DNA of 64,000 nt, taken from the IMG/VR virus record IMGVR_UViG_3300037087_000760, positions 146,984-210,983 of that record, one strand, 5' to 3'. The notes under the pieces are model-generated. The model was given only the letters and a program-made list of their open reading frames with translations. It did not search any database and was not told the origin of the DNA. The position numbers and the translations under genes are program-made. Below, piece after piece: positions 11,855 to 63,544 of the stretch. The first letter of the stretch is position 1. The number at the start of each line of letters is the position of its first letter.

Positions 11855-12847
11855 TCAGGTGGTAATTGGTTGTTTATTACTATATTCATTTTTTAAAATA
11901 TTCATCATATCTATATGATTATGAACAGTTTTTATCTGATAAATATGGTCTAATCCGTATTCCTTTATTATATTATCTATTCTTTCCTTTTCCATTCCAT
12001 GCGAACTATAATCACTTACTCTTCTTCCACCTTCTTCTTTAAAATATAAAATACTTCCCTTTGGGATCTTGAATGATTTATCATTAACAGCCCATTCTCC
12101 CTCAGTTTCGAATGTTACACTATTTATTTCAAAGGCTTTTGAAAAAAGTTTCCTCAGTTCAGGAAATTCTAATTTGTCTTTTATGTAATCTTCAATTGGT
12201 TTCCAATTTTTCCAAGGATAATCCTTTGTCATTGGATAATCAACAACATATTCTTTTAGCATTTCCAAAATTATCTTGACAAAATCATCAAGATTATTTA
12301 TATGTAATTGACCTAAATGATAAAGATCATCTATTTTTTCCGACAAAGTATAATGAATATCCTGAATATAATTAATTATACCGTTTTTATCATGATAAGT
12401 ATCAAATTTAAGTCCACCATCTCTTTTTTTCTTAATATTTCTATAAGCTAAATTTTGAAACAATTTATCTAATGCCCCAGTGAAGGTTATATCTCTTTTA
12501 CGGCCATTTTTATATTCGATAAATTGTGGATCATTCATTACTAATCTTCTCCAGTACTTAAAATTTTGTTTACAAAAGAAATCTGGATTGAAGTATTCTA
12601 TGGGTTCTAAGTTTTTATTCAATTTCAAGACTTCAGAACCATTCATTATGACAAGCAACTCTCTGATGTCAAACCAGTGTTTTGCTATCCCATAATGGTC
12701 TGAAATTCCCTTTAAATTCAAAAATTCCATCCTCATTAAAGAATCCCACACTTTATCATCTCCAACTCTTAAAACTAAATAGAACCAATTAGGTTCATTC
12801 TTGGGAATCCATTTCTTTTCGAATATTTGAAAATCAGTAATCATCAA
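11855..12847 (-). CDS. Hypothetical protein with N-terminal capsid-targeting-like tag
   Basis: MITDFQIFE start; ExE-like ETEGEW near C-terminus. Confidence 0.55.
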   Translation of the reverse strand: MMITDFQIFEKKWIPKNEPNWFYLVLRVGDDKVWDSLMRMEFLNLKGISDHYGIAKHWFDIRELLVIMNGSEVLKLNKNLEPIEYFNPDFFCKQNFKYWRRLVMNDPQFIEYKNGRKRDITFTGALDKLFQNLAYRNIKKKRDGGLKFDTYHDKNGIINYIQDIHYTLSEKIDDLYHLGQLHINNLDDFVKIILEMLKEYVVDYPMTKDYPWKNWKPIEDYIKDKLEFPELRKLFSKAFEINSVTFETEGEWAVNDKSFKIPKGSILYFKEEGGRRVSDYSSHGMEKERIDNIIKEYGLDHIYQIKTVHNHIDMMNILKNEYSNKQPITT

Positions 12848-12872
12848 TGTATATATTATTTTTTATGGGCAC

Positions 12873-12896
12873 AAAAAAACCGTGAATTCACGGTTT
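12873..12896 (-). terminator. Intrinsic terminator
   Basis: AAACCGTG-AATT-CACGGTTT with U-tract on - strand. Confidence 0.75.
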
Positions 12897-13543
12897 AATG
12901 TTATATTATATTAGAAGTTAAAAGTTAATACCAGTATAATCAATAAGATCTTTCATATGTTCATTCTTATGTCCTTCGGCGTGTTCCATAGCTTCAAAGA
13001 TATCTGTCTTACTTCTTTCAGTTTTGAATCCATTTGTAATTATATCAACATATTTAGGATCTGTCCAACTTTTAAATCCAGTTCCATTGATTGCATATGG
13101 GTTGAATCCCCAATGAGCTTTACACTCAACACCATCTTCAATTGTTGGTTGAAAAAAATCCAAAGATCCATAATTTCCAACAAAAAATCTTTTCTTTGTT
13201 AGTTTATCTTCAAACATCAATCTATATACATTCTTTAAGTCTATCCAATAATATCCGTAGCAAATTCTATATCCGTATTTTTGGGTTTCGCTGAATTTAT
13301 TTGGATTGAATGAAACATTTATCTTTTTTGGATTTTTTGCTTCTATTACTTTATAGTAATTGTCGAATGTAATTCCAATCTCATGAAATTGACCATCTAT
13401 TAATCCTGCATAAGATCTCCAACCCAGACCAAAAGCACAATCATACCAATCCCATTCACGGGCAGGGATATTCTCTTTATAAAGTGGTTGAACGACTAAC
13501 TTTCCTTTACGGATAGTCAGTCTTTCAATCGGATTTATTGTTT

Positions 13544-13729
13544 TCATTTTCTGACGGCTAAAAGAATGATACCGAAAATAATTATAATTACTGCAAAAGG
13601 AATCCACAATGGAGAAGTAACCCACCACCATGACCATGTTATAGCACCTGTTAATTTAAGAATTAGGAATACGATGAACAATACTGTTCCGAAACTCATT
13701 CCACCACTTGCTGTTGAATTTTTTGACAT
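13544..13729 (-). CDS. Small phage membrane protein
   Basis: Two hydrophobic helices, LKLTGAITWSWWWVTSPLW. Confidence 0.75.
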   Translation of the reverse strand: MSKNSTASGGMSFGTVLFIVFLILKLTGAITWSWWWVTSPLWIPFAVIIIIFGIILLAVRK

Positions 13730-14253
13730 AATATTAATTTTTAATTGTTATTACTTAATAATTGTTGATAATAATTATATTTGTATTTATCATAGTTATC
13801 TTTTGTCATAAAAAGTAGATATATTGTTCCTTTATTAATATTTTTGATTAACCAACGATATACAAATGTATTTCCTTTTGGTTCTTTCCATATATTATTT
13901 TTCTTGTCAAAATTATCAGCATCCGTAGAATTAATAAAGGCTCTTAGATATTTATTGTCGTAATCTTCAATATAAAGTTTGAAAAGGTCAGTATTATACT
14001 CCATCATAATTATATAGAAGTAACAAAAATCACTCTTAGTAAAATAATATAAATTTGTACTCGATTGAAATTTAATCACTATGGAATAATAACCACTATC
14101 TATTTTTTCGGGTTTACTAATAGAAATAGAAATTGGTTTCAATTGTTTCAGAATGTTTTTTTTGGTTTCACCTATAAATGATTGTGAAAATACGAAATTG
14201 AACATTACAATACCAACGAGTGTTAAAAATAGTTTTTTCATTATCATTTGATT

Positions 14254-19825: not shown

Positions 19826-19830
19826 GAATC

Positions 19831-20121
19831 ATGAGAAATTACAAATTAGAAAAATTACAAGCCGGAGAAAGTTTCGTTACCAGTGAAAAAGGTAATTCCA
19901 TGTCACCAATTATTAAGTCGGGACAAAAACATAAACTTGTTCCCGCCACTTGGAGAGATGTAGATGTAGATGATATAGTCTATTGTAAAGTCAAAGGAAA
20001 CTTCTACACTCACCTTGTAAAAGCAAAAAATGAAGATAAGGGTTGCTTAATAGGTAACAACAAAGGTGGAGTTAACGGATGGACTAAACAAGTCTATGGT
20101 AAGGTTGTAAAAATCCTTTAA
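19831..20121 (+). CDS. S24/S26 peptidase-like small protein
   Basis: GNSMSPII, DIVYC, THLV. Confidence 0.55.
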   Translation: MRNYKLEKLQAGESFVTSEKGNSMSPIIKSGQKHKLVPATWRDVDVDDIVYCKVKGNFYTHLVKAKNEDKGCLIGNNKGGVNGWTKQVYGKVVKIL

Positions 20122-22137: not shown

Positions 22138-22186
22138 AGATTTTTATTTCTATATATAAAAATTTATGTGTAATGTTTCATAGTTG

Positions 22187-22260
22187 TAACCCCACCCGGA
22201 CTTGAACCGAGATATTTAGTTTCTAAAACTAACGCCGCTAACCAATTAGGCCATGGGGTC
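22187..22260 (-). tRNA. tRNA-Leu(TAG), short variable loop (atypical)
   Basis: 74 nt, TTAGT-TTTAGAA-ACTAA, A73. Confidence 0.85.
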
Positions 22261-26301: not shown

Positions 26302-27174
26302 GACACTATATATTGTAACAAATTTATCTTAAATTTCCATTTTCATTTAAAAATATTTCTTTTCCATGAGTTACAAAGATAAGAAATACTTTCAAATAAA
26401 AAAATTATAAATCAACTTTTTCGAACAACTTCTTATTAAGTTCCAAAAACTTAGTTTCAAAAAGAGCCTTCACATATACTCCATCATTTTTAAGGAACAC
26501 TTCGTTTTCGAAACAAATTAATGTCGTGCCGGGTTTAGCGGTGATGTGATTTGAATCATCAACTGGTATATTAAAAAATTGAGTTGTCTTATATACCTTA
26601 ATGTCTCTTTCTGTTTTTGAAACTTTCTGTGCTTCAATTGGTCTCCTACTTTCGTTTATAAATTCCATAGGTGATTTAATATTTTTATAATCCATTCCAT
26701 ATTATTATTTTTTTGTAAGAAAGTCTACGATATCACTCACTGAGTTCTTAGCTGTTTTGTAAGCACTTTCTGAATCAAAACCTAATGACTGTATATATTC
26801 ATAATAATTGTACCTCTTTTTATTGAAGATGTACCAAAAACAAATATTAATCTTTTTCATCTATTCTATCGTTTAAAAATTTAGCTAATTTTTTAGCTTC
26901 CTCAGATTCCAAAACAATTTGATCATCATATATTCTACCAGTAAAAAGATGATAAAAAGCGTATCTGATACGACCAAAAATCAAACTCCTTATAGTCTGT
27001 TGACCATTAGTATATATGGCAATGTAAAACAATTTATCTTCTTCATCGTACTGAATTTGGATCAAATGAGTTCCACAACTACACTCTGATACATGCTTCG
27101 TTTTCATGTTGAATAAATTTTTATGGTTTTATATTATATCCTTGAATATAGTGAAATGTTTCGAAATAAAAAAT

Positions 27175-28137
27175 TTATTTGATTTCTATTTTTATGTTTG
27201 GTATGAAAATATTTACTTTATCAAGATCATCTATTAAATCTTTCTTGTATAATTTAGGATACCAATTTGAATCATATTCGATACCAATTATATATTTATT
27301 AATACCTTTTATACAATCAAAATTATTTGATGGATCATATTTCAAATTAAGTTCAGTATGAGAATTACATTCTACTCTTTCTTCAGCTTCGTGTTTAAAA
27401 TATGGATCTTTATGATATAAATGAGATCTAATTTTAAAATGATGGCTCATTCTATCACCATCGAATGTTATTTTAACTGGATGGTTATTATAATTTAGAT
27501 TTTTATTTCTCGAAAAAGATATAAAATGAAATAAGGAAATCATTCTATCATCTTTTAAAATATTCTTCAAATTATCCAAAGTTGTCCAATGATATAAGAA
27601 TCCAACCTGTTTTGACTCTTTTAATTCACAACCCCAATTATAATTTCTCTCCCTTTGATATTGTTTTATTATTTCAACTAAACTTGACCAAAAGACAACA
27701 GCTGTAGTTCCTACCCCTTCTTTAAATTTTATTGAATCGTATCCTTTCTTTTTAAGTTTGGGAACTATATGATATTCCCTATCCAATATTTCTAAAACTT
27801 TATATGGTGAAAAATAATCATAACCATAGAATCTTTGTTTCCTCATAAGATCATTTAATTCTGTTTCGGGTATAGGTAACGATCTCAATAATTTTTCATA
27901 ATTATCAATTCCTTGCTCTCCATAAGGTGTTAAATCCAATGTTTTTTCCAAGTGAAGTTTAACTACATAGATATATTTTCCATATCTTTTCGATTCCTTT
28001 TCCGTATCGGAGAAATATATTCCCATTCTACTTTTTGTAGTATCTCGTCTGGTTTTAAATGATGTAATATCATCATTATAACTTCCATGATACCAAATTT
28101 CATTATCATTATTGAATTTTTCAAAAGTGGTTAACAT
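27175..28137 (-). CDS. Tagged protein with two ART-like domains
   Basis: WYHGS..GIYFS..YG..GYDSI; LYHWT..ISFSR..EAEERV. Confidence 0.6.
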   Translation of the reverse strand: MLTTFEKFNNDNEIWYHGSYNDDITSFKTRRDTTKSRMGIYFSDTEKESKRYGKYIYVVKLHLEKTLDLTPYGEQGIDNYEKLLRSLPIPETELNDLMRKQRFYGYDYFSPYKVLEILDREYHIVPKLKKKGYDSIKFKEGVGTTAVVFWSSLVEIIKQYQRERNYNWGCELKESKQVGFLYHWTTLDNLKNILKDDRMISLFHFISFSRNKNLNYNNHPVKITFDGDRMSHHFKIRSHLYHKDPYFKHEAEERVECNSHTELNLKYDPSNNFDCIKGINKYIIGIEYDSNWYPKLYKKDLIDDLDKVNIFIPNIKIEIK

Positions 28138-29122
28138 ATGATGTATTTATCTTTTCTTTCTATCTGGTTGATCATATGGAATGACATATCCAATCTTATT
28201 CTTATCATCATATACACCGAATACGAATCCGAATTGCTTTATCATATCTAAATATGGAATATGCTGATTCTTTTCATCATTTACCCAAGAATGTCCACAA
28301 CTAAAAAATCTACAATTTTGGATAGCCTTATCATATTCTTCTTTACTATGAACGACTGTAACCTGTGGATGCTTTTTTAAATGTTCCTCGGCTATTTTAT
28401 AACCATAAATATCACTTTCAACTCTTAATTCTGGATGTTCGTTTGTTCCGATTTCAGGAAATTCGAGTAATCCCGGCATTGGTTTTTGACCCAACATTAA
28501 ATCTTCATTTGTTTCATCCTCTAAATCAAAAACAACATCATATAATAATTCTCTGACATATTCTATTTCTTTTGGATATAAATAAGTTCTGTATTTAAAA
28601 AGAACTTGTCTTACAATCTTTTTGAATTTATTATAATCATCATCATTCATTATCATAGCCCCAATATATGGCTGAATTTGTGGATCTTGTTTAATTCTTT
28701 CAAACCATTTTTTGGCTCTTTCGTAGGTGAAAACAGGTTCATCTTCAAATCTTTCATTAACAAATTCTTGAAACTTTTTCATGATGTTGTTTTTTATTGA
28801 TATATATAAAATAAAAAAACCGGATGTTATCCGGCTCAAATGTAAAGATCATATATTAATAACATATGATCTCTAAAATTTTCTCGATCCACACTATCAC
28901 CAGCAAATTCGTGTTTCTTGATATATTTATTATACCATCCATTAAATAAATCATTAACCATTTTTCGAGTTAATTGATTTCGGAAAATATCACTATGAAC
29001 TTTCCCTTTACAATAAAACTCACATACATAATCAATAAACTCTTTTTTCATTTCTGGTGAAAGATCTGAATTTTCATTTAAAGACTGAGAGAAAGATTCA
29101 AAAGTTTTTAAGTTTTTCATTC

Positions 29123-30208
29123 TTATTTTTTCTTCTTTTTTTCTTCTGGTATTGATGGTGGAAAATATTCCAATAACCAAGAATCTAAATTATCAGCAGA
29201 TGGTTTATAATTATGTTTTGAATATAAATGACGAACCTTATCGAATTCATCATCAGTTACTTTTGTTCCACAATCTGTACATTCAACTGTCTTGGCTGGT
29301 TTTGGAACTGAATTTTCAACAAGTTCATCTTCAATATTGATATCAATATCATCAATATTTATATCTTCTTCGATAGTATCTGGTTTTATATGAAGTCTAT
29401 TCATTATAAAATCTGAAAATTTTTCTATCTTAATTTCTTTTTTTTCACCAATATCATCACTATCATGATTTCTTCCGAGATATTCTTCTTCTGGTTCACC
29501 ATTTATCATCAAAATAACATCCTCACCAGCAGCTCTTCCGTGTCCTGATTTAGATTGTTCCACATATTCTTGATATGTTTTTCTTGCCTCTTCTTCTGTA
29601 TCACAAGGAATATTACCGATGTTTCCTACATTTACAATGAATTCATCTGGAACAATCACTTTTTCTTCGATAGGTTTTTCAACTGATTCTAAGATTTCAT
29701 CTTCTTCAACTTCCTTAATAGCCTTAACGGTATTAGCCGCGAAATTTTCCCATTTCTTTTCCCAAAGTTGTTTTTCCTCAGACTTTTTTTCATTCAGGTT
29801 TAATATTTTACTTAAAAGATCTTTATCGGTTTCATTTAATTCTGGTTGTTTTACTTCCTCTACATTAATAGTAGATTCATAAGTTTTTTCTGCATCCTTC
29901 TTTTCTTTCTTATAAGCTTTATGAAACTCTTTTAAAAATTCGGGTAATGAATATTCTTTGATTTCTTTACTCAATCTATCTTCTACATAAACGATACTAT
30001 CTTTTACACTTTTGATTATACCATCTATCTTATCGGTTGTAATTTGGCGACCTCTAATACCTAAATTATCAAGAGGATCTAAATCACCCCTATTGATGGT
30101 CTGTCTTGGAGATGGTTTGATAAATAAATCAGTATCACCACCAACACCCTTACCTTTATTTTCGGTACTTTCTTTCATGAAATCTTCAAATTTTTTAATA
30201 TTCTTCAT
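29123..30208 (-). CDS. Acidic tagged protein, likely head-associated
   Basis: MKNIKKFEDFMKES start, internal KIEKFSDF. Confidence 0.55.
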   Translation of the reverse strand: MKNIKKFEDFMKESTENKGKGVGGDTDLFIKPSPRQTINRGDLDPLDNLGIRGRQITTDKIDGIIKSVKDSIVYVEDRLSKEIKEYSLPEFLKEFHKAYKKEKKDAEKTYESTINVEEVKQPELNETDKDLLSKILNLNEKKSEEKQLWEKKWENFAANTVKAIKEVEEDEILESVEKPIEEKVIVPDEFIVNVGNIGNIPCDTEEEARKTYQEYVEQSKSGHGRAAGEDVILMINGEPEEEYLGRNHDSDDIGEKKEIKIEKFSDFIMNRLHIKPDTIEEDINIDDIDINIEDELVENSVPKPAKTVECTDCGTKVTDDEFDKVRHLYSKHNYKPSADNLDSWLLEYFPPSIPEEKKKKK

Positions 30209-31578: not shown

Positions 31579-33237
31579 TTTTTATTTTTTATTTTTTAAC
31601 AACTTCTAAACCACTCGTATTGGTATCAGTTGATTTAGGCATTTTCTTTGGGTCTTTTTCTGGGATATCAGTTGGTACTGGTTTTTTATCATCATCCACA
31701 GTATAACCTAAACTCTTTCGAGCATCATTTTTAACAAAATCTTCATAAGAACAAATATATCTATCAATTGGATTATCCCACCAGAATAAATTATTTTGTT
31801 GATGTTTTTTTAAATCAGAAATTACCCTATCACCAATATCAGAATGCATCGTTTTGGTTTCTGGACCAATTTTTACTTCTTGATTCCCCATGATTTCTGC
31901 ACGAATTCTTTTCAACTGATCAACAGTTGATTGTCTTGGTAAACTTTCATACAATTTATCTCTAAATATGCTAAATTTTGCAATCATATGGGTATATATT
32001 AATTTTTTAAATCAAATATTCGTAATCTATTCTATCAGTAGTATCTATATCAAATCCAGTAACAACACTAATCCAAAATAAGATATCACCAATTTGAACA
32101 TCTCCATCATTCACTCTTGCTTGAGATGGATCTCCATTAGCTGACACTGAAGTGAAATAAGTTCCTATTTTTCCCCAAGGTCCATCTGGAATACCAGCAT
32201 ATACTTGACCTCCAGAATTAACGATAATCTTAACTCTCGATTTTGGTTTTTGTAAAACTGGAGCATTTCCGTACAAAGCAGGTGTTCCACCACTAACAAA
32301 CATAGGTGTAATACCTGATGTTGATTGACAAATCATTTGAATGTTCAATGTATTAAATGTAGGTCTTTCTCCTTCCACCATTTCACCAGTTTGAACAAGT
32401 AATGTTTTTCTTATAGATTCTAATTTATCCAATGCAAGTTGGGCCGTTTCACGAGAATCGAAACTCAACATAATATCATTTCGATTAGTAATTTTGATAA
32501 CCACACAATTATTCTTAACAAACCAATGAGATAAATCCAGAATAATACTATATCTGAAATTCCCATCCTTATCCACTATAATTATTCTGGTTGTATCTCC
32601 ATTTGGAATTGAAACAAAATTCTCTAATTTGTAATTGTATGTCATTCTTTTTTATTTTTTAATTTTTTATTTCATCATCGGAATAATTTCACTATCTTCC
32701 CCTACTGTTGATACTATTTGCCATCCCATCTTTAACCAAGATTTTAACTCCGCTTCCAATTCTTCCACTTCTTTTAATACATCTTTTAATTCATATTCAC
32801 CAACTGGTAATCTTAAATAAGTGGAATTAAATCTCAAACCTTCATTAATAGATTTGGACTCTTTTATAATGTCTTTAAATCTTTTTACTTTATAACTCTC
32901 TTTATGTATATCTGAATCACTACTTCTATGATTCTGATGTGGTTTAAATCCCATTTCGAAATCCAAAATTCTGGCATATTTATTAAATAACATTTTTTCA
33001 TCACCCTCTAAATATTTCCAAAGTTCATCGTCATAAGCGTCCATTCCACCAATAGAACCTTCGTGCCCACTTCCATGTAAATCATCATTCAATAACTTTA
33101 GAGCTTTTCTTCTAAGTTCTCTATATTTTATTCTGAGTTCGTCTTTATCGAAACTTTTGAGTTTAAGATATTCATCATAATACTCTTTATCCCTTTTGAA
33201 AAATTCATCATCTATCATATTCATTTAATTATTTTTA

Positions 33238-34832: not shown

Positions 34833-35503
34833 TTTTATTTTAATTTATTTTTGATCACCGAATAAAACATTATCTATAAGTGGATTATACGGATGAAAGT
34901 TTACATCAATAATTGTTTCTCCTTTATATATATTTCCAATTAAATACTTTAATTTAGCCTTTTCAAATTGTCCCTTTGTATTCAATAGTATTCTGATACT
35001 TCCAAATCTGATATCAAATGGTTTATCGGGATGATTTGTCGAAAATTCTTTCTTAGTTCTGTCTGTAACTATTAAGCAAACCCATTTCTTTCCTATCTTT
35101 CTTCGTATCTTTTGATACTCTTTTGCATATGCAGTCATCTTAGGCTTTTTCGGTTTCTTCAATTTCTTTTTTTCTAATAAGAATTCATCAAATCTTAATA
35201 TTATCATATTCGTATAATTTTATTTTCCCCAATCTTTTCCCTCAGGTGAAATTTTTACCAGTTCTTTAATTCTTGTTATTGCTTTATCAAAACAATCAAA
35301 GAGCTCATCGTCACCTACTAAATTATAGAGTTCACCCTTTAAAGATTCTATTGTTTTAATATAAGACTTAGCCACTTTTTGTTCTTCTGGATTTTTGGGT
35401 AATGCCCATGTTCCTTCATTAACAAACTCATTAAATTTCTTCATTTTCATGGATTTTGATTTCTTTTCTTTAATATATATTAAAAAACTAAAATACTTTT
35501 TCA

Positions 35504-41060: not shown

Positions 41061-42256
41061 TACAACTTTCAATGGAAAGAGAAAAAATATTTATGAAAAA
41101 TCATATGATAACAAAATTTAAAATGTTTGAATATCACGAAGAAAATATAAATAAAATATTGGATAAAATAAACAAACACGGTAAAGATTCTTTAACGGAT
41201 TTTGAAAAAGAAATACTTCAGAATCAGGGTGATATAAAGATACAAAAATATTATGAAAAAGGACATTTTGAATTTGATTATGACTCTACAAAAAATGAGG
41301 ATAAAAAAATAATTGTCAATGGAACTTTAAAATATAAAGGAAAAGAATATCATGGTTGTTTCACCTATCCCCAAGAAATAGAACATGAATCGTCAATAGA
41401 TGATAAATTTTATAGTGCATCTTATGGATTCTGGAAATTCTTTGATGAAAGAAATCTTGAATTTGAACCAGATGATGATGATTTTTATGATTTAGATGAT
41501 TTGATGCAGGAAGTAGAAGCCAACTTTGTAAATTAATATATACATTCATGATAAAGGATTTTTTAACATATATAAAGGAAAATCAGGGATCACCCGTAGA
41601 TGGTCGTTACGGATTCTATATGTTTTTACACACATTAGATGAAATGAAATTTTCATTTATTAAATCTGGAAATTATTTGAATACTGGAAACTTCCTTTAT
41701 TTTTTTAGAACCGAGTGGATAAAAAAACCAATAGATGTATTAGATGGATTTGAATTTAAAGATTCTGTTAAGAATACATTCAGAACATATGGTAAAATCA
41801 GTAATGAGAAATTATCTTTTTATTTCGGTATCAGGAATGGTATTTTAGAATATGGTTTTTATAATGATCTAAAAGATGTTATTTATAAAACTGGACAATT
41901 AAATATAAAAGACAATGAATTGAGACAAATAAAATCATATAGTTGTTTAGCTATGATAAGTGGGGTACTGAGAATAGCATCCACTAAAACATTAACTTTA
42001 TTACATGAAATCAAAAAAGATCTAAAATATTTCTTTGAAGATAAGACCAGTAAAGGAATAATCATCTTAACAACTATGAGACTCAGAAAAGTCATTTCAA
42101 AAGAATTATTAAAAGATAATATGAAAAATTCCGATGATCTAACTAATACTTTTGTTGAATGGTGTAATAAATATCCTTGGGGTAAAAAGATAGAAGCATA
42201 CATTGATGATTCCGAGGATGATGTTTCTTTCTACATAAAAATAAAATCCAAGAATA

Positions 42257-42841
42257 GTGATAAACCTGTTGTCTTATAATAGTTTCATTAATGAATCTAA
42301 AATATATGAACATCCATTATTTCATGGTTCTGGCCGTAAATTTGATATCTTTGACTTTAATAGATTGGGTCAAGATGGTCATTTATTAAGTTTTCTTGGG
42401 ATTCATTTTACTGAAAATGATACTGTTGCTGAAAGATTTACAAATCCACCTGATTATATTATCTACGAAATAGAATTGAAATATAACAAATTCTTGAAAA
42501 TAAAAGAGGGTAATTTAGTCAAAGAAATGTTGAAGTTTGGACTTGAAAAAAAGATAATCGATTTATCAATTTTTCCATCAAAAAACATATTTGATTTACC
42601 ATATTTTGGAACAAAGAATTGTTTAATGAATCAATTATTTAATTTAACAGATGGAAAAGCAAAAGAAATTTCATTGGAATATAAAAACCACCTAATGAAT
42701 CAAGGATATGATTGTATTAAGTATATAAATGAAATAGAATCACCAGACATTAAAAGATTTGATTGGATTATCTTTAAATCAGAACAAATAAAAGTATTAA
42801 AAGTGTGGGATTTAAAACCAAGATTGGAAATAAAATGGTAA
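42257..42841 (+). CDS. Tagged ART-like protein
   Basis: LFHGS..FLGIHFT..GYDCIKYINEIE..WIIF..QIK. Confidence 0.65.
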   Translation: MINLLSYNSFINESKIYEHPLFHGSGRKFDIFDFNRLGQDGHLLSFLGIHFTENDTVAERFTNPPDYIIYEIELKYNKFLKIKEGNLVKEMLKFGLEKKIIDLSIFPSKNIFDLPYFGTKNCLMNQLFNLTDGKAKEISLEYKNHLMNQGYDCIKYINEIESPDIKRFDWIIFKSEQIKVLKVWDLKPRLEIKW

Positions 42842-43425
42842 CGAAATTTTACATATTTGAAAAAAAAAACAATATAGTTGGTCCATTATATCATGGAAGT
42901 GGAATAGTATTCGATAAATTTTCAAATGAAAAATTAGGAAGTAGCCGAAATGTTGTACATTTAATGGATTTTCTTGGAATTCACTTCACCCCCGATAAAA
43001 AAATGGCCGAAAGATTATTCTCAAAACCACCCAATTATGTTGTTTATGAAGTTGAAATCAAGGTTAACAAGATTTTAAAAAAGAGAGAAAGTCAATTAGT
43101 GAGGGATATGCTGAAATGGGGAGGTGAAAATGACTATGTTGACAAGGAATTCATTGAAAAGAATTACTTATTATATAGAACATATAGTAATATAACACCA
43201 TTCGATAGAGAAAATAAAATAATTTCATTGAATCATTTTCTATTAGAAGATAACACATTTGATAAAAAGAAATTAACACTTGATTACAAACAATATTTAA
43301 TTGAACAGGGTTATGATTCCATACATTATTTGAATGAAATAGAATGGTCATCAGATGAAAGATGGGATTGGATAGTTTTTAATGATAACCAGATAAAAAT
43401 AATTAATATATACAAGGGTAAATAA
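42835..43425 (+). CDS. Tagged ART-like protein, tandem paralog of 42257
   Basis: LYHGS..FLGIHFT..GYDSIHYLNEIE..WIVF..QIK. Confidence 0.65.
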   Translation: MVTKFYIFEKKNNIVGPLYHGSGIVFDKFSNEKLGSSRNVVHLMDFLGIHFTPDKKMAERLFSKPPNYVVYEVEIKVNKILKKRESQLVRDMLKWGGENDYVDKEFIEKNYLLYRTYSNITPFDRENKIISLNHFLLEDNTFDKKKLTLDYKQYLIEQGYDSIHYLNEIEWSSDERWDWIVFNDNQIKIINIYKGK

Positions 43426-45235
43426 AAAATAAAATCAATATATGAAACACATTAAAGAATTTGAATTGAATGAAAATGCAACTCCAGTTGATTCTTTCAG
43501 AAAAGAAATTATGGATGCATATATTTGGATAAGAAAAAACAATAGTACCATTCCAGATGAAGTTTTAGATTTCATGAAAGACGCTGCCATTGAAAAATTA
43601 GATTCTAAAACTAAAGAAAGTATACTTTTGCTTAAATTTAGAACAGAAGATATTTATCATAATAAACACACTTTGGCTGTTAATCAGAGGTCAGATGATT
43701 CAATTGGATATTCATTTTTCTCTGGATGGCAAAGTTCTGGTATGGGTAATGCTTTGAGTAATATGATGATGAAGAAATCTTTACCATCAAGTGTAAAAGG
43801 TTTCTCCAATATAAAACAATTACAAAGTGAAATTCAAAGTTGTATCGATTCTGGTGTTGGTGAGAAGGTAATGAAAGTTGAAGAAATAAATAAGATAAGG
43901 AAATAAATGAAGAATATCCTGACATACAATGAATTTATAAATGAAGATTATCGTGATGTTGTTGGTTGTGGTAGTGGGGGTATACACGCGGATGACCGTC
44001 AACAACCTATTATAGCAAGTGGTAAATATAGTAGTGGAAGTATTACCAGTATTAGTAGTATCGGTGATTGGAACGGAGATAAAAAGGTATTAGGAACAGA
44101 AGAAATAAAGGATGTTAAGAGTGATTATTTTAATCAAAGAAGAAGGAGAAAAAAGAAAGAAACACCAATAGAAGAAGAAAAGAAAAAGAGAATGAGAAGA
44201 AAAGTATATAAAAATTTATTAGCTCTTGATAAAGCGGTAGAAGAAGATAAAGATAATAATATAACAACAAAATTTGCTGATTTTAAAGAGGATAAAATAA
44301 AGAAATTCGACAAGACCAAGGAATTTGATCCCTTATCCGATGATATCATGGTATTTCAAGAACTCGAAGATGGTGAAATTGAAAAAGTTAAAGAACCAGT
44401 AAAAATTTTACAAGTCACTGGAATCATAACTGATCCAGAAAAGATTAAGAAACTTGAATCTGTTAGTGGTGGACCTGTTTTTTCTACCGAATTAAAAGTA
44501 AAATCTGTTAAAAGAGGTGATATAATATGGTTAACAGCCTTATTGGAAAGACCACATGCAACTACATCTTGGAATGCTCAAACAATGGGTGTAATCAAAG
44601 CAAGAGTTGTTGATTACTATTACGGTTTAAATAAATTGAAATATGTATGATTATAAGATTCAAAAAATTTAATGAAAAATTAGATCTTGTTAAAGATGTT
44701 GACAAATTGTTGGAAATATCCAAATGCAAAGCTTTTTATATCATTTTCAATAATAAAACAAAACAAGAAATTAGTATTCCATTAGATTATTGTAGTGGTG
44801 AATATGCCGCACTTCTTAAAGGTTATTCTGTTAAACCATATAAAAAAAGTAATTTGATTCCAATTACTGAAAAGAATGCACTCATGTTAATAGTAGATTG
44901 GGATTATTCATATGAAATAAAATCAGATCTTGCTGATGAAAAACGTAAAATTCTTATTATTCAATACGATTTACCAGATAAATTACCAGAAATGAAAGAG
45001 AATTTATTAAATGAATCTGATACTCAGACATATAGGAAACTCCAATTCATAAGAGAACAAATCAGAAATATAACAAAAACTATTCGTGAAGTTGATTGGA
45101 AAAAAACTACTGACGGTGAGAAAAGTGATATATCTGATTCTTTGGAAAATTTAGTTTCTTTGGTAAAAAATAAAGCCAAATAATTTTTTTATGTTAGAGA
45201 AATATAGTATTTTTGTAGTTCAAATCCCTACCAAC

Positions 45236-47174: not shown

Positions 47175-47588
47175 TTAAACTTCATCTATAATTCTATCTG
47201 GTGGTATGTTTCTTTCTACATAAACAGCTTTACCATCTTCACCTTTTGAAAATTGAGAACTCCATTCACTCATATCACTTGCTTCTTCATCCTTAATTAA
47301 ATCATAACCTGATAAATCGACTTTCCATATTGTCATCTCTTGTGGATTATATCCATCTTCTTCATTGAATTCTTTAAACCATTCAGCATATTTCAAATCC
47401 AACCAAAAATAATTTCTTATTGGTGACATTTCTTTTTTACCAAGTCTGGAATATCTTTCTTTTGGTATCTTTTTAATACCCTCTTTTAAAATTTTGGAAT
47501 CTAATTTCGATGGAGCTACATGATAACCAACGATTATCTTCTCAGAATTCTCATTTATACTTAAATAATCATCAAAGTTCAGAATCAT
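47175..47588 (-). CDS. Tagged ART/Tpt1-like protein
   Basis: GYHVA..ILKEGI..NYFW..NIPPDRI. Confidence 0.55.
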   Translation of the reverse strand: MILNFDDYLSINENSEKIIVGYHVAPSKLDSKILKEGIKKIPKERYSRLGKKEMSPIRNYFWLDLKYAEWFKEFNEEDGYNPQEMTIWKVDLSGYDLIKDEEASDMSEWSSQFSKGEDGKAVYVERNIPPDRIIDEV

Positions 47589-48211
47589 CGTCACCATCAC
47601 TCGTTTGGAAAAAAGTATTTAAATCTTCAATATGAACTTTCTTTCTACCAGATGATACGGGTTTTCCCTCTTCTTCTGGTTCTTCTGGAATTAAATCTTC
47701 ATCATCTGGATCTGGTTTATTCCAAACATCATCTTCTTCTTCCTGTTCATGTTCTGTATTTTCATCATCAGATAATTCCTTTGGTTTAAATTCTATTTTG
47801 TAAATAAGTTCTCCACCGACTTTAGAATGACCTGATGAATCTTTACTTTTTTCTTTTTCTCTTTCGGTAGCTTCAATTGCCTGAACAAATATTAGAGTAA
47901 CATCGAATTTTCTTTTCTTTGATGGACCTTCTCCCAATTCCAGTTCAAGATGTTGTTGAGGATCAACATAATTAAAATCTTCGGGATTAACTTTAAATCT
48001 TATCATATCACCATCAAAAGTTTTCTTTAAAGCATGATCAAAATTACCATCTACTATGGTCTTTGCACTTTTGGTCACTTCTTCTGGTAATTCGGCTATA
48101 GTTGTTTTTTTATTTTCTTTAATGAAGGAATCAAAATTCATAATGAACTTGTTCATGACTAATTGGTTTTTCTTTTTATATATTAAAATAAAAAAATCAA
48201 TTTTCAACCTG

Positions 48212-49854: not shown

Positions 49855-50340
49855 TTAGTCAATATGTATACGAGAATGTAAATACATCCTTGGTGTCCAT
49901 TCCTCTGTTGAAATGATACTTATTGATTGAGCGATGGTTGTAAGATACAAATTATTTTTAGTTTCTAATTCTTTGTTTATATAGTCAACTAATTTATCAA
50001 CTAATATCCTTTCTAACTGTTGAACGATGGTTGAACTATCCAAAGAAGATTCTTTAATTGCTGTTATTTGAGCACTATCAACCTCAACATCGAAACTTAA
50101 AGTTGGTAATCCTTCTTTCAATATAACATTTTTATCCTTTATATTTAATTGAGATAGAATTTTTAAAGAAACTGGTAATAAGTTTTGAGCAATATCATCC
50201 TCACCAAGTTTTGTTACTATTAAATTTTCAATTTCATGTTTAAGATGAAATTCAGCGTATTCAGCCATAATTTTTCTAACTTTTTCGTCTGTTACTTTTA
50301 GAGCGTCCATAATAGGACTCCATTTTGTGTAAATATCCAT
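49855..50340 (-). CDS. Hypothetical protein resembling the N-terminal arm of gp23-like capsid proteins
   Basis: KWSPIMDAL...MAEYAEFH...LLPVSLKI. Confidence 0.4.
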   Translation of the reverse strand: MDIYTKWSPIMDALKVTDEKVRKIMAEYAEFHLKHEIENLIVTKLGEDDIAQNLLPVSLKILSQLNIKDKNVILKEGLPTLSFDVEVDSAQITAIKESSLDSSTIVQQLERILVDKLVDYINKELETKNNLYLTTIAQSISIISTEEWTPRMYLHSRIHID

Positions 50341-61078: not shown

Positions 61079-61108
61079 TGATGTCCCTTACCTTTATAAT
61101 CAATCAAT

Positions 61109-62008
61109 CTAAAATTTTCTAATTTTTTCTACGAAGCTGAATAATTTTCTAATATATTCATCTTTCTTATATGAACTGGTCATTAAATAAACACAATAAA
61201 CAAAATACATCATTTTATTAATTACAATATTTTCATTTATATTTTCTCCACCAACTTGACGAAATTCTACATAGTTTTTATTGAATAATTTCCAAAAATT
61301 AATATTATAAGTTTTTTGAGTGGATGTAAATATTTTTTGAATAATTTGTTCAATAAGGTTCTCTATTTGATTCTTATTCATGTCAGTTATATTTCTATTA
61401 TTAGATGTCTTTTGATAATTTTTATCATTGTTTATTATCATCATAAAAATCTCAGTCTTTAAACTACTACAATATCCACAGGTTTTTCGAGCTTCAATGT
61501 TTTTAAATGTATAATCATCCGATAACATCATAACACCTTTAACAACATTCCATCTTGATTTCGGTTTTTTTGTACCGATATTAATATGAATACTTGTTTT
61601 ATCATTAAAAAACCATTTATTTTGTTTTTCAAAATCTTCGAAAAATATTTTAATGAATTCTTTAGATTCTTGTAAGCTATGAAATGGTGGAGTTACAAAT
61701 TCCATTCCAGATGAAACTGTCCCTTCATAATGATATTCCAAAATATCGAAATATTTTCGGAAGAAATTTGGAAAATTATTTTTGATATCCATCACTTTTC
61801 TTCTATCCTGAATCGATAATACATTTAATTTCTTCGATTCATTGGTTATTATTTTTGGGGGAGTAGGTAGACTTCTAATTCTTCTATGGTCAGTGTCCAT
61901 TTCAATTTCAAATCCGATGGTAAAATAGTCATCCAAAGTCTCTAACAACGAAACATCTTTTTTCTGAAATTCCAAGAGAAATTCATCATATGTTCTAAAA
62001 TTTTTCAT
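61109..62008 (-). CDS. Tagged putative amidoligase (COOH-NH2 ligase)
   Basis: TIGFEIE, EFVTPP, SIHINIG, YNINF, VEFR. Confidence 0.75.
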   Translation of the reverse strand: MKNFRTYDEFLLEFQKKDVSLLETLDDYFTIGFEIEMDTDHRRIRSLPTPPKIITNESKKLNVLSIQDRRKVMDIKNNFPNFFRKYFDILEYHYEGTVSSGMEFVTPPFHSLQESKEFIKIFFEDFEKQNKWFFNDKTSIHINIGTKKPKSRWNVVKGVMMLSDDYTFKNIEARKTCGYCSSLKTEIFMMIINNDKNYQKTSNNRNITDMNKNQIENLIEQIIQKIFTSTQKTYNINFWKLFNKNYVEFRQVGGENINENIVINKMMYFVYCVYLMTSSYKKDEYIRKLFSFVEKIRKF

Positions 62009-62445
62009 AAATATCTTATTGATGTTTCTTTTGTTATTTTTTCTTTGAATACTTCTTTAAATTTACTTGAATCAATTCCCATAATTACAAATGTTCCTAC
62101 TGCATTGTAAGAATCTAACCATGTTTCAAAAAATGATCTGTTCCCATCATCATCATCAACTACCCATTCTAAATTTAATATTTCTTCATCTATCACAATT
62201 TCAAACACGACAGCCGTTAATTTATCGTATTCCTTATCCCCATTATGTATCATTCCCTCTGTTCGACTTATAGCGTGATATTGAGCATGTTCTTCTTCAT
62301 CTGTTACAAATAAATAACTTTTCTCCAATTCTCTCCAAGTTTCTAAGGTAGTACCATGATACATTTTTTTACCAAATAATTCTTCTTTGGTTTTTATGTT
62401 GGTAGATTCAAGTAAAAAGTCTTTAAATGTTTTAAAATGGTCCAT
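62005..62445 (-). CDS. Tagged ART-like protein
   Basis: MDHFKTFKDFLLES; MYHGT..LFVT...A..HA. Confidence 0.55.
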   Translation of the reverse strand: MDHFKTFKDFLLESTNIKTKEELFGKKMYHGTTLETWRELEKSYLFVTDEEEHAQYHAISRTEGMIHNGDKEYDKLTAVVFEIVIDEEILNLEWVVDDDDGNRSFFETWLDSYNAVGTFVIMGIDSSKFKEVFKEKITKETSIRYL

Positions 62446-63025
62446 CTATGAATTTTATATTCTTTTTATCATATACTCCATATGATATGCCATAATCCTC
62501 TTTTTCAGTTATATAATCTGTTAAAGAATTTTGAAAATATTGAAATGAATTGTATTTCAAATAATTATGTATGAAATAATCGAAATACTTACTTGATTCT
62601 ACATGACGAGTGTATATGGTATCAAAAAATTCTCCCATCTGAATAGTATCTTTAAATTCACTTTCAAAATTATAATTCTGTAATTCTCTCAAATATGTTG
62701 GATTCTTATTCTCTAATATGATACGAAAATCATTTAAAAGACGGTTCGCTTCAAATACTGGTATCTCACGATTCATGTCCAATAAAGGTTCTTCCAATGT
62801 TATTTCAAATTTACAAGTATATATTTTTTTACCTCCCCTCATCGGATAAAATCTTATATCTGGACTGCTGGAAAAATAAATGGCACGACCAAATATGGAA
62901 ATATCACTACTATGGTCCATTTTGAAATCAGCTTTTAACATATGTTCCAATTGGTTAGATAAGTGATAAGCTATTACTTTCTTACCCCCCTTAGCTTCCA
63001 ATAAAAATTCAGTAAATGTTTTCAT
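62432..63025 (-). CDS. Tagged ART-like protein
   Basis: MKTFTEFLLEA; AYH..FGRAIYFS..YGVYD..NIK. Confidence 0.6.
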   Translation of the reverse strand: MKTFTEFLLEAKGGKKVIAYHLSNQLEHMLKADFKMDHSSDISIFGRAIYFSSSPDIRFYPMRGGKKIYTCKFEITLEEPLLDMNREIPVFEANRLLNDFRIILENKNPTYLRELQNYNFESEFKDTIQMGEFFDTIYTRHVESSKYFDYFIHNYLKYNSFQYFQNSLTDYITEKEDYGISYGVYDKKNIKFIDGPF

Positions 63026-63544
63026 ATTTTGTATTTATCAATTACATCTTGTAATTCTTTCTTAAATTGTTCTATGGTATCACCAGCTATTACACAAATT
63101 GTTCCCTCACTTACCACTCTTACTTCAGTATCAGAAACCTCACTACCATACAAATCAGAAATGAGTTCCACTTCAACACCAGTTATTTCAGTTCCGAAAT
63201 GAAATCTATCAGTTCTGGCTTTTGCTCTGTACTCTTTTTCTTCTTTTACAAATTGAGTAAATCTTTTCATAATAATTATCCTTTATTTTTCAATGAAATT
63301 TTTACGGATGTAATCAGCCGCGTCATATAATCCAAAATGATTGGCTACATGATATAAATCTTGCATTTGTTCAGATAGTGAATCCTGTCTTTGTGGAAGT
63401 TTTTGGATTTTTTTTAATTCCTTATGACCCAACCATTCGGAATTTTCCTTGAGTAAATCTGAAAATTTATCCATAAACACTAAATTTATTTCGCTTTATA
63501 TATTAAAATGTTAAACCAGTAATTAGTTTTCATCTATAAAAAGA

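What the first reader, a model, noticed from the sequence alone, without database searches (positions are those of the whole stretch)
11855..63480. About 30 unrelated ORFs share a T4 internal-protein-like capsid-targeting tag
Seen: N-termini such as MKTFTEFLLE (63025), MKRFTQFVKE, MDHFKTFKDFLLES, MKNFRTYDEFLLE, MKKFQEFVNE (28782), MKNLKTFESF..LNE, MKNIKKFEDFMKES, MKRFKDFIKE, MIILRFDEFLLE, MKKFNEFVNE, MKNILTYNEFINE and MKHIKEFELNE, mostly at 26.4-48.2 kb and 60-63.5 kb, often after TATATA motifs. Internal copies occur too (KVKRFKDIIKES, KIEKFSDF, MIINFGEF..LLE). Known: T4 IPII/IPIII start MKTYQEFIAE, a capsid-targeting sequence cleaved after Glu by gp21. Inference: a very large head-packaged, injected cargo set, with internal tags marking polyprotein cleavage sites.
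Basis: partly seen in the sequence, partly recalled or inferred. Interest (0 to 1): 0.76.

Follow-up and report, generated by a model that had tools for sequence, protein, structure and literature searches.

The report
Capsid-loading tags on many phage genes
About two dozen unrelated genes in this piece of a huge bacteriophage genome begin with the same ten-residue leader, which matches the T4 signal that loads proteins into the phage head and is then cut off; this suggests an unusually large set of proteins shipped into the host with the DNA.

Summary
In the 211-kb record holding the window, the core motif [FY]xx[FY][ILVMK]xE sits at residues 3-10 of 23 of 356 ORFs, against about 1 expected. 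Twelve of these are in the window, about 27 with looser variants. The carriers are not paralogues, and the constraint acts on the protein, not the DNA.

The motif places its aromatic, aliphatic and Glu residues where mutagenesis mapped targeting (4, 7) and processing (8, 10) in the T4 capsid targeting sequence MKTYQEFIAE.

The window is a fragment of a huge phage. An 81.8-kb contig identical to window 28967-40208 also carries a Gp23-type capsid gene and an 818-aa S77/S80-like prohead protease fused to a scaffold; a longer contig adds a T4-type portal.

That scaffold holds eight tandem 14-residue repeats, each containing the same motif (YSEYIAE). The tag therefore looks like one scaffold repeat.

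Tags are conserved in orthologues, flank head genes in related contigs, and occur as MKTYQEFINE in a true T4-like phage. In cellular genomes the motif is rarely N-terminal. Three tagged proteins are ART-PolyVal ADP-ribosyltransferases.

The best reading is a head-loading propeptide removed by the prohead protease. Packaging, cleavage and injection are all untested. Internal copies occur at chance level, so the polyprotein idea is not supported.

The parts
28147..28782 (-). Tagged ORF, 211 aa, MKKFQEFVNE (aromatics at residues 4 and 7, V8, E10, as in T4)
   Evidence: same start called in other assemblies; no Pfam or PHROG match
29123..30208 (-). Tagged ORF, 361 aa (P0001), MKNIKKFEDFMKES. The tag is a predicted helix (residues 7-16) followed by a Gly-rich, low-confidence linker.
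   Evidence: tag conserved in 24 orthologues; AF2 model; orthologue in LR756501
30266..30580 (-). Tagged ORF, 104 aa, MKRFKDFIKEE
34845..35207 (-). Tagged ORF, 120 aa, MIILRFDEFLLEKKK, very basic (pI 10)
35220..35450 (-). Tagged ORF, 76 aa, MKMKKFNEFVNEG; AATATATA lies 31 nt upstream
41548..42279 (+). Tagged ORF, 243 aa, MIKDFLTYIKEN; AATATATA lies 13 nt upstream
43907..44650 (+). Tagged ORF, 247 aa, MKNILTYNEFINED
   Evidence: weak atlas lead to an 'IpIV internal head protein' cluster (score 0.65, lead only)
47572..48156 (-). Tagged ORF, 194 aa, MNKFIMNFDSFIKEN
61109..62008 (-). Tagged ORF, 299 aa, MKNFRTYDEFLLEF; Amidoligase_2-like body that starts after the tag
   Evidence: atlas score 0.95, TM 0.61-0.68 from about residue 11-33 onward; no Pfam hit at E<=0.01
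62005..62445 (-). Tagged ORF, 146 aa, MDHFKTFKDFLLES
62432..63025 (-). Tagged ORF, 197 aa, MKTFTEFLLEA (6 of 10 residues identical to T4 MKTYQEFIAE)
63022..63270 (-). Tagged ORF, 82 aa, MKRFTQFVKEE
63283..63474 (-). Near-strict tag, 63 aa, MDKFSDLLKEN
   Evidence: score 12.1
26405..26695 (-). Near-strict tag, 96 aa, MDYKNIKSPMEFINES
   Evidence: score 15.2
28836..29120 (-). Near-strict tag, 94 aa, MKNLKTFESFSQSLNEN
47175..47597 (-). Near-strict tag, 140 aa, MVTMILNFDDYLSINEN
27175..28137 (-). Variant tag MLTTFEKFNNDNE followed by an ART-PolyVal ADP-ribosyltransferase domain (residues 15-151), 320 aa
   Evidence: Pfam PF18760, 41.2 bits, above cut-off
42835..43425 (+). Variant tag MVTKFYIFEKK followed by an ART-PolyVal domain, 196 aa
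   Evidence: Pfam PF18760, 41.2 bits
11855..12844 (-). Variant tag MITDFQIFEKK, 329 aa; AATATATA lies 13 nt upstream
31589..31987 (-). Variant tag MIAKFSIFRDKLYES, 132 aa; 64% identical orthologue in LR756501 (MITKFNKYDKVFES)
38800..39333 (-). Variant tag MIVNFKVFEGMKES, 177 aa
44647..45183 (+). Variant tag MIIRFKKFNEK, 178 aa
41105..41536 (+). Variant tag MITKFKMFEYHEE at an internal Met of ORF 41072-41536, which is the likely true start
43442..43906 (+). Weak variant MKHIKEFELNEN, 154 aa
30681..31578 (-). Two weak-variant ORFs: MNTKLKYLKTFEELVEK (119 aa) and MEKLNNLLNFDEFSKD (178 aa, with an internal repeat of its N-terminal module). Both have counterparts in the LR756501 cluster.
39507..41060 (+). 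517-aa protein without an N-terminal tag. ART-PolyVal domain at residues 36-275, then an internal tag-like MIINFGEFEFVLLE at residue 289 (nt 40371). Possibly a fused tagged gene or an internal cleavage site.
49855..50340 (-). 161-aa paralogue of the N-terminal part of the phage's Gp23-type major capsid protein. It is context only, not a tag.
   Evidence: tblastn to the LR756501 capsid gene, E = 4e-12; compare the capsid protein N-terminus

Best explanation
The shared N-terminus is a head-loading propeptide of the T4 'capsid targeting sequence' type, used on a much larger scale by a huge phage that probably infects Bacteroidota.

Proposed mechanism (inferred):
1. The 10-16-residue leader forms a short amphipathic helix. 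Two aromatic residues three apart are followed by an aliphatic residue, any residue, then Glu.
2. This helix resembles one unit of the 14-residue repeat (consensus D-K-N-I-x-Y-S-E-Y-I-A-E-N-L) that builds the scaffold domain of the phage's own protease-scaffold fusion protein.
3. The helix therefore co-assembles with the scaffold core inside the procapsid.
4. The S77/S80-family prohead protease, which in T4 cuts after L/I-x-E, degrades the scaffold at its repeats and clips the leader after the Glu. The mature protein is left free inside the head.
5. The protein leaves with the DNA at infection.

The cargo includes ADP-ribosyltransferases of the kind found in injected polyvalent proteins. Others are an amidoligase-like protein, a Mom-like DNA modifier outside the window, and many orphans.

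What is shown: the motif and its enrichment, its protein-level conservation, its virus-specific N-terminal position, the physical linkage of the window to a T4-type head module, and the motif repeats in the scaffold. What is inferred: binding to the scaffold, cleavage, residence in the virion and injection.
For: 1. The enrichment is strong and independent of Met or composition.
2. The carriers are non-homologous. Known domains begin after the tag: Mom at residue 16 and ART-PolyVal at residue 15-30.
3. Synonymous codon use in the tags equals genome usage, and the tag is conserved in 24 orthologues of P0001. Selection therefore acts on the peptide.
4. T4 CTS = MKTYQEFIAE. Targeting maps to residues 4 and 7, processing to residues 8 and 10, and the gp21 motif is L/I-x-E (PMC9026906). 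The window motif has exactly this spacing. T4 gp23 (FGSFLTE ending at residue 65) and gp24 (INELLRE ending at residue 10) also carry the extended motif ending at those residues; that gp21 cuts there (after Glu65 and after residue 10) is from my own knowledge.
5. Logan contig SRR23247760_3130 is 100% identical to window 28967-40208. It also carries the 818-aa protease-scaffold P0053 and a Gp23-family capsid gene. A longer contig adds Portal_T4.
6. P0053 matches Peptidase_S77 (E = 3e-5) and S80. It has conserved DHP and SSRAAG motifs, which I take to hold the catalytic His and Ser (not verified).
7. P0053 has 9 copies of the strict motif, 8 of them at a 14-residue period, against 0.24 expected (p about 7e-12). 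Homologues have 10-14 copies.
8. In a 6.6-kb contig the tagged ORFs flank the portal and protease genes.
9. In the 735-kb relative LR756501, orthologues of window genes 29123, 31589 and 31042 form a tagged cluster about 17 kb from portal-protease-capsid. In that genome 53 of 1018 genes are tagged, against 3.1 expected.
10. A T4-like contig with a strong gp21 match (E = 8e-105) has MKTYQEFINE, MKSFKEFINE and MKSFKEFMSE small ORFs.
11. The same DNA pattern is N-terminal in 28 of 120 viral matches and in 5 of 120 cellular matches (p = 1.9e-5).
12. Three of the four ART-PolyVal proteins in the record are tagged (the fourth has only an internal tag-like copy). Such ADP-ribosyltransferases are described as injected with phage DNA (PMC7824862). 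T4 Alt is a packaged ADP-ribosyltransferase processed by gp21.
Against: - No proteomic, structural or expression data exist for this uncultured phage.
- The protease is not in the window or in the 211-kb record. Its Pfam scores fall just below the curated cut-offs (23.9 against 27 bits), and its specificity is unknown.
- The structure-based docking test of the tag against the protease-scaffold gave no answer.
- Tagged proteins are not basic, unlike the T4 internal proteins.
- Tags prefer Phe and Asn/Lys where the scaffold repeats have Tyr and Ala, so the mimicry is approximate.
- Between 5% and 15% of all genes would be cargo, which is far beyond any characterised phage. One carrier is a Mom-like enzyme, which in Mu (from my own knowledge) acts in the cytoplasm.
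- Enrichment of the S77 protease among tag-bearing contigs is only suggestive (13 of 29 against 2 of 14, p = 0.09).
Confidence: 0.7

Rival explanations
1. The leader is only a protease-removable propeptide, like a zymogen lock or timing device. It keeps toxic enzymes such as ADP-ribosyltransferases inactive in the producing cell until late infection, without loading them into the head.
For: The [ILV]xE end of the motif fits the gp21-type cleavage rule. Several carriers are potentially toxic enzymes: ART-PolyVal, an amidoligase-like protein and a Mom-like protein.
Against: In T4 the two aromatic residues are needed for targeting, not for cleavage, and they are the most conserved positions here. 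Prohead proteases act inside procapsids. The scaffold repeats carry the same aromatic pattern.
Confidence: 0.1
2. The leader is a general N-terminal amphipathic helix used for another purpose. It might sort proteins to a different compartment or partner (membrane, replication factory, chaperone), or improve translation starts in an AT-rich genome.
For: The tag is spread over the whole genome, not only near structural genes. Carriers have ordinary pI and varied sizes. AT-rich codons dominate the tag.
Against: Codon choice in the tag equals the genome average, so there is no extra RNA-level constraint. The invariant Glu and the aromatic spacing are not explained by translation. The tag is not hydrophobic enough for a signal peptide. 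N-terminal placement is rare in cellular genomes. The tags cluster with head genes in relatives and appear in the scaffold itself.
Confidence: 0.1
3. The conserved start is a DNA-level cassette boundary that lets accessory genes be swapped by recombination, as has been proposed (from my own recollection, not checked here) for the T-even internal-protein loci. The peptide would be incidental.
For: Tagged genes are clustered (18 adjacent pairs against 8.4 expected, p = 4e-4). They often follow a shared AATATATA promoter-like box at a fixed distance.
Against: The nucleotide sequences of the tags differ freely at synonymous sites and match genome codon usage. Only 2 of the window tags match even a degenerate 21-nt pattern. 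Conservation is at amino-acid level across orthologues.
Confidence: 0.03
4. Chance or compositional artefact of an AT-rich genome (frequent Lys, Asn, Phe, Glu, Ile).
For: The genome is 30.6% G+C, and these residues are encoded by AT-rich codons.
Against: Shuffles and the internal-rate control give 1-8 expected, against 23-37 observed. Internal positions of the same proteins are not enriched.
Confidence: 0.01

Closest known systems
[quoted passage not shown]
   Same: It is an extreme N-terminal leader of about 10 residues. Aromatic residues are three apart, followed by an aliphatic residue, any residue, then Glu. It sits on otherwise unrelated proteins. The phage has a Gp23-type capsid, a T4-type portal and an S77-like protease. 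Five window proteins even keep the exact positions 4, 7, 8 and 10.
   Different: T4 has three internal proteins. Here at least 23 strict tags occur in 211 kb, and 53 in a complete 735-kb relative. Many leaders are 1-4 residues longer. Phe and Asn/Lys are preferred over Tyr and Ala. The cargo is not basic. The protease is fused to a repeat-built scaffold rather than encoded separately as gp21 and gp22. Nothing has been tested experimentally.
T4 Alt, a packaged and injected ADP-ribosyltransferase with gp21-cleaved propeptides
   Same: An ADP-ribosyltransferase with an N-terminal propeptide in a phage with a T4-type head. Here three ART-PolyVal proteins carry the tag.
   Different: The ADP-ribosyltransferase family is different (ART-PolyVal, PF18760). 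There are several copies. No evidence of packaging exists.
Ejection and inner-body proteins of phiKZ, 201phi2-1 and SPN3US, processed by S80-type proteases (gp175, gp245)
   Same: Giant heads that hold dozens of different proteins. Many have propeptides cut after Glu by a gp21-related protease. P0053 also matches Peptidase_S80 weakly.
   Different: The cleavage motif there is S/A-x-E with few other determinants, and no common N-terminal targeting leader is described. The phage lineage and hosts are different.
Polyvalent proteins of phages and conjugative elements (Iyer et al. 2017; cited in PMC7824862)
   Same: They share the same ART-PolyVal domain and are proposed to be delivered with the DNA for early conflict with the host.
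   Different: Those are giant multidomain single polypeptides. Here the domains are mostly separate small proteins, each with its own loading tag. One two-domain case (39507-41060) has an internal tag-like junction.
Encapsulin cargo-loading peptides
   Same: A short, transferable peptide directs unrelated cargo into an HK97-fold shell.
   Different: The encapsulin peptide is (from my own knowledge) usually C-terminal, binds the shell directly and is not cleaved. This is an analogy only.

Membership tests
T4-type capsid targeting sequence (CTS) / gp21-processed head cargo | Leader at the extreme N-terminus, about 10 residues, on otherwise unrelated proteins | tested here: met
   The motif starts at residues 3-10 in 23 of 356 ORFs, against 1.06 expected. 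There is no similarity beyond the tag.
T4-type capsid targeting sequence (CTS) / gp21-processed head cargo | Targeting determinants: two aromatic residues three apart (T4 residues 4 and 7) | tested here: met
   F/Y at motif positions 0 and +3 are the strongest columns of the motif. They sit exactly at residues 4 and 7 in MKKFQEFVNE, MKRFKDFIKE, MKTFTEFLLE and MKRFTQFVKE; MDKFSDLLKE keeps residues 4, 8 and 10 but has Leu at 7. The T4 mapping is from PMC9026906.
T4-type capsid targeting sequence (CTS) / gp21-processed head cargo | Processing determinants: L/I-x-E directly after the second aromatic residue (T4 residues 8-10) | tested here: met
   [ILVM] at +4 and an invariant E at +6. This is at sequence level only.
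T4-type capsid targeting sequence (CTS) / gp21-processed head cargo | The phage encodes a gp21-family (S77) prohead protease and a T4-type head (Gp23 capsid protein, gp20 portal) | tested here: met
   These genes are absent from the window and from the 211-kb record. They are present on a contig that is 100% identical to window 28967-40208: P0053 plus a Gp23-family gene. Portal_T4 is on a longer contig. P0053 scores 23.9 bits against S77, below the 27-bit cut-off, but close homologues are annotated PF03420 and PF20034.
T4-type capsid targeting sequence (CTS) / gp21-processed head cargo | Leader cleaved after Glu, with the mature protein present inside virions and ejected | not testable with these tools
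   The phage is uncultured and no proteomics exist. The docking prediction gave no answer.
T4-type capsid targeting sequence (CTS) / gp21-processed head cargo | Small, highly basic DNA-associated internal proteins (typical of T4 IPs, not strictly defining) | tested here: not met
   Median pI is 6.6-7.7 for tagged proteins against 7.0 for untagged (Mann-Whitney p = 0.31). Sizes run from 63 to 552 aa.
ART-PolyVal ADP-ribosyltransferase (PF18760) | Profile match above the curated cut-off | tested here: met
   27175-28137 scores 41.2 bits, 42835-43425 scores 41.2 bits and 39507-41060 scores 39.3 bits, against a cut-off of 31.2. A protein outside the window at record position 91783 scores 78 bits.
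ART-PolyVal ADP-ribosyltransferase (PF18760) | Catalytic residues intact, and enzymatic activity | not tested
   Only the YHGS-type start of the domain was noted by eye. No residue-level alignment was made.
phiKZ-type inner-body or ejection proteins | Homology to phiKZ internal head protein families, with S/A-x-E propeptide sites | not tested
   No search with those families was run. The motif here has an aliphatic residue at the -2 position (two residues before the Glu), not Ser or Ala.

The most novel reading that the evidence does not exclude
Huge phages of this clade run a modular cargo-loading system. A ten-residue leader that copies one unit of the scaffold's own 14-residue repeat lets any protein join the scaffold core and be released by the fused protease. 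In this way 50 to over 100 different enzymes and anti-host factors (about 5% or more of all genes) travel in the head and are delivered with the DNA. That would be the largest pre-packaged protein arsenal known for a phage. It would also give a mechanistic explanation, scaffold mimicry, for how capsid targeting sequences work, which as far as I know is still unsettled even in T4.
Probability: 0.4. Interest if true: 0.85.

Novelty: new variant of a known kind. Interest (0 to 1): 0.72.

Why it matters
If the tags work as in T4, a simple sequence rule identifies the injected protein set of an uncultured huge phage directly from its genome. These are the proteins most likely to disarm host defences in the first seconds of infection, so the rule gives a ready list of candidate anti-defence and take-over factors.

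The match between the tag and the scaffold repeat suggests a testable mechanism for capsid targeting. It also offers a family of natural leader variants for loading foreign proteins into phage heads.

The scale is notable too: about 5% of genes in a complete 735-kb relative carry the tag. This changes the picture of what the extra coding capacity and head volume of huge phages may be used for.

Tried and rejected
- **Near-identical DNA in GenBank phages:** no match.
- **Peptidase_S77 and the L120 protease in the 211-kb record itself:** absent. The weak Gp23 hits there are small capsid-gene fragments.
- **PHROG and Pfam scans of about 29 tagged proteins:** mostly orphans.
- **Large non-tagged proteins of the record:** no structural genes found.
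- **SbcCD-like protein as a marker for relatives:** only two distant small contigs, and no match in five large tag-bearing contigs.
- **Docking of the tag segment against the protease-scaffold:** score 0.00. The tool states this is no evidence either way.
- **AlphaFold model of the 361-aa tagged protein:** low confidence (pLDDT 60). It was used only for the tag helix and linker, and no fold search was made.
- **HMM built from the four ART-PolyVal proteins:** no further members in the record. The YH-x-[ST] starts of 62432-63025 and 47175-47597 remain unassigned.
- **Basic-protein expectation from T4:** not met.
- **Contingency test of S77 presence in tag-positive against tag-negative contigs:** suggestive only (p = 0.09).
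- **Literature search for capsid targeting in huge or jumbo phages:** no paper combining the terms.
- **Rejected explanations:** chance or composition, an RNA- or DNA-level signal, and a paralogous family.

Full report
**What the window is.** The window is the last 64 kb of a 210,983-bp IMG/VR virus record (30.6% G+C, labelled 'provirus', CheckV 71% complete). It has no near-identical DNA among GenBank phages.

The record is in fact a fragment of a much larger phage. The 361-aa protein encoded at 29123-30208 occurs letter for letter on 18 contigs. The cluster table lists a longest contig of 736,551 bp.

Logan contig SRR23247760_3130 (81,809 bp) is 100% identical to window 28967-40208 over 11,242 bp. 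At its other end the same contig carries an 818-aa protease-scaffold fusion (P0053) followed by a 609-aa Gp23-family major capsid protein. A 597-kb contig with the same genes adds a 604-aa T4-type portal. By the contig's coordinates the head module lies about 44-46 kb beyond the right end of the window.

The closest named relatives of the protease are the 460-735-kb 'uncultured phage' genomes LR756500-LR756504 and the Lak megaphages of Prevotella. One homologue is annotated from a Saprospiraceae MAG. The host is therefore probably in Bacteroidota (inference).

**Checking the observation.** I called ORFs crudely, taking the first ATG and resolving overlaps greedily. This gave 356 ORFs for the record, 107 of them in the window. 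Gene callers used on four other assemblies of this phage give the same lengths for the tagged genes between 26.4 and 35.5 kb.

| Motif definition | Observed at N-terminus | Expected |
|---|---|---|
| Strict [FY]xx[FY][ILVMK]xE, residues 3-10 | 23 ORFs | 1.06 from the internal rate (p about 5e-23) |
| Weight matrix, 7 core positions, no Met | 29 | 1.4 |
| Loose [FY]xx[FY]x(1-4)E | 37 | 7.7; residue shuffles mean 7.5, maximum 15 |

- The density is higher in the window (18 of 107) than outside it (19 of 249).
- Tagged genes are clustered: 18 adjacent pairs against 8.4 expected (p = 4e-4).
- The window has 12 strict tags, 4 near-strict and about 11 looser variants. Many of the variants have the form M-[IV]-T-K-F-x-x-F-E.
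- BLASTP finds no similarity among carriers apart from a few unrelated pairs.
- The 'TATATA' remark corresponds to AATATATA placed 13 or 26-32 nt before the ATG of 54 genes, 18 of them tagged (p = 3e-4).
- Internal matches number 18, against 12.5 +/- 3.2 in shuffles, which is chance level.

**Protein-level signal, specific to viruses.**
- Synonymous codon use inside the tags equals genome usage. Phe TTT is 76% against 67%, Glu GAA 86% against 85%, and Asn AAT 82% against 82%.
- Only two window tags match even a degenerate 21-nt pattern.
- In 24 orthologues of the 361-aa protein the leader M-x-N-[VIL]-K-[KR]-F-E-D-F-[VIM]-K-E is conserved.
- An exact 21-nt pattern for F-x-E-F-[IV]-N-E hits more than 118 IMG/VR contigs. 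The motif lies 2-9 residues after the first Met of an ORF in 28 of 120 of those matches. In cellular genomes the same pattern is N-terminal in only 5 of 120 matches (Fisher p = 1.9e-5).

**Match to the T4 capsid targeting sequence.** The T4 leader is MKTYQEFIAE. A review of L. W. Black's work reports that only these ten residues are needed for packaging. Targeting depends mainly on residues 4 and 7 and processing on residues 8 and 10. gp21 cuts after L/I-x-E (PMC9026906).

The window motif puts its aromatic residues, its aliphatic residue and its Glu at exactly these relative positions. In four window proteins (MKKFQEFVNE, MKRFKDFIKE, MKTFTEFLLE, MKRFTQFVKE) they sit at the same absolute positions; MDKFSDLLKE keeps positions 4, 8 and 10 but has Leu at 7.

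Translating the T4 head genes from NC_000866 shows the extended motif in gp23 (FGSFLTE, ending at residue 65) and gp24 (INELLRE, ending at residue 10). That gp21 cuts at those points is from my own knowledge.

A 159.9-kb, 95%-complete T4-like contig has a gp21 match of E = 8e-105. It carries three small ORFs starting MKTYQEFINE, MKSFKEFINE and MKSFKEFMSE, which bridge the T4 form and the form seen here.

**The phage's own scaffold is made of the motif.** P0053 matches Peptidase_S77 (E = 3.2e-5, 23.9 bits) and Peptidase_S80 (22.9 bits) in residues 28-142. Both scores are just under the curated cut-offs, but many close homologues are annotated with these families. Alignment of 26 homologues shows invariant DHP and SSRAAG motifs; I take these to hold the catalytic His and Ser, but did not verify this.

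Residues 332-436 consist of eight 14-residue repeats, each containing the strict motif: YQKYIAE, FIEYVAE, YSEYIAE, YADYIAE, YAEYVAE, YADYISE, YTQYIAE and YGEYVAE. Nine strict matches in 818 residues compare with 0.24 expected (p about 7e-12). Homologues have 10-14 copies.

The repeat consensus D-K-N-I-x-Y-S-E-Y-I-A-E-N-L has a core very close to the T4 leader (Y-Q-E-F-I-A-E). From this I infer that the leader mimics one scaffold repeat, joins the scaffold core through helix packing, and is cut at the same kind of site that dismantles the scaffold. The mimicry is not exact, because tags prefer Phe and Asn/Lys where the repeats have Tyr and Ala.

**Context in relatives.**
- A 6.6-kb contig reads: tagged 99-aa ORF, three further ORFs, portal, 610-aa S77 protease-scaffold, tagged 323-aa ORF, tagged 77-aa ORF.
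- Of 29 contigs with an N-terminal tag, 13 contain an S77 match, including five fragments of 7-47 kb. Of 14 contigs with only internal or non-coding matches, 2 contain one. This is suggestive only (p = 0.09).
- In the complete 735-kb genome LR756501, portal, protease-scaffold and capsid genes lie at 72-78 kb. A cluster of tagged genes orthologous to window genes 29123, 31589 and 31042 lies at 93-97 kb, beside two proteins of about 670 aa and one of 2667 aa.
- Genome-wide, 53 of its 1018 ORFs carry the strict tag, against 3.1 expected, and they are dispersed along the genome. Its protease-scaffold has 14 internal copies, and a 1691-aa protein has 7.

**What the cargo is.**
- Most tagged proteins are orphans.
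- Window proteins 27175-28137 and 42835-43425, and one outside the window, are ART-PolyVal ADP-ribosyltransferases in which the domain starts after the tag.
- A fourth ART-PolyVal protein (39507-41060) lacks the N-terminal tag. It has MIINFGEFEFVLLE at residue 289, right after the domain.
- ADP-ribosyltransferase domains of this kind are described as part of proteins injected with phage DNA (PMC7824862). T4 Alt is a packaged ADP-ribosyltransferase with gp21-cleaved propeptides.
- A Mom-family protein outside the window has the tag in front of profile position 1.
- 61109-62008 looks like an Amidoligase_2 enzyme, with the fold starting after the tag.
- In an AlphaFold model of the 361-aa protein (low overall confidence), the tag is a helix at residues 7-16 followed by a Gly-rich, low-confidence linker.

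**Weaknesses.**
- There is no direct evidence of cleavage, packaging or injection.
- The protease is outside the window, and its specificity is inferred from T4.
- The docking prediction returned no answer.
- Tagged proteins are not basic.
- The implied number of cargo species is unprecedented.
- The polyprotein idea is not supported in general.

**Verdict.** The capsid-targeting reading is the best-supported explanation (about 0.7). It is a known mechanism found in a new lineage, on a much larger scale, and with a scaffold built from the same motif. I found no description of this in the searchable literature.

Noticed in passing
window 49855-50340 (-), with 50700-51960 (+): A 161-aa ORF is a paralogue of the N-terminal 150 or so residues of the phage's Gp23-type capsid protein. 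It lies next to a small ribbon-helix-helix-like ORF and an HNH homing endonuclease. Other capsid-like pieces lie at record positions 32817-33782 and 125670-126150, and a portal-like 295-aa piece at 44536-45423. The intact head genes are elsewhere in the genome.
   Followed up: partly
window 7426-11508 (+) and 22186-23007 (-): There are 21 tRNA genes in two arrays. The first holds Leu, Ile x2, Asn x3, Met x2 and Gln x5. The second holds Leu x7 and Tyr. The first array explains the local rise in G+C.
   Followed up: no
whole record; in the window e.g. 12857, 35481, 39346, 41535, 48184: A promoter-like box AATATATA sits at a quantised distance (13-14 or 26-32 nt) from the ATG of 54 genes, on both strands. 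Some pairs are back to back and divergent. The 13-nt class would give nearly leaderless mRNAs.
   Followed up: partly
whole record G000: The IMG/VR labels 'provirus' and '71% complete' are misleading. Identical sequence lies on contigs of up to about 0.6-0.74 Mb that carry T4-type head genes, so the record is roughly a third of a huge phage genome.
   Followed up: yes
L140:10001-12457 (P0053), outside the window: The prohead protease is fused to a scaffold domain built from eight 14-residue repeats, followed by an acidic, Pro/Glu-rich low-complexity stretch and a conserved C-terminal domain. Homologues number in the thousands in metagenomes.
   Followed up: partly
window 31042-31578 (-) and 34443-34832 (-): These two ORFs share a repeated module of about 40-60 residues (NNLLNFDEFSKDW..., 69% identity) that occurs twice in the first ORF. 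A counterpart exists in LR756501 at 67.3-67.6 kb.
   Followed up: no
window 1-870, 18836-25050: This is an auxiliary-metabolism neighbourhood. It holds an NAD synthase-like 590-aa ORF that runs into the window start, an AAA_28 (NadR-like) protein, a class-I tRNA-synthetase-like protein preceded by a GIY-YIG endonuclease, and a CYTH protein. None of these carries the tag.
   Followed up: no
record 9594-10214 (-), outside the window (L003): A Mom-family (PF25680) DNA-modification protein carries the tag MIKTFLEFINE in front of profile position 1. This is an unexpected candidate for head loading.
   Followed up: no
LR756501 21458-26533 (-) and 11386-11787 (-): In the 735-kb relative, a 1691-aa protein contains 7 internal copies of the tag motif, and a second weak S77-like match exists in a 181-aa ORF. 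These may be further core or scaffold components.
   Followed up: no
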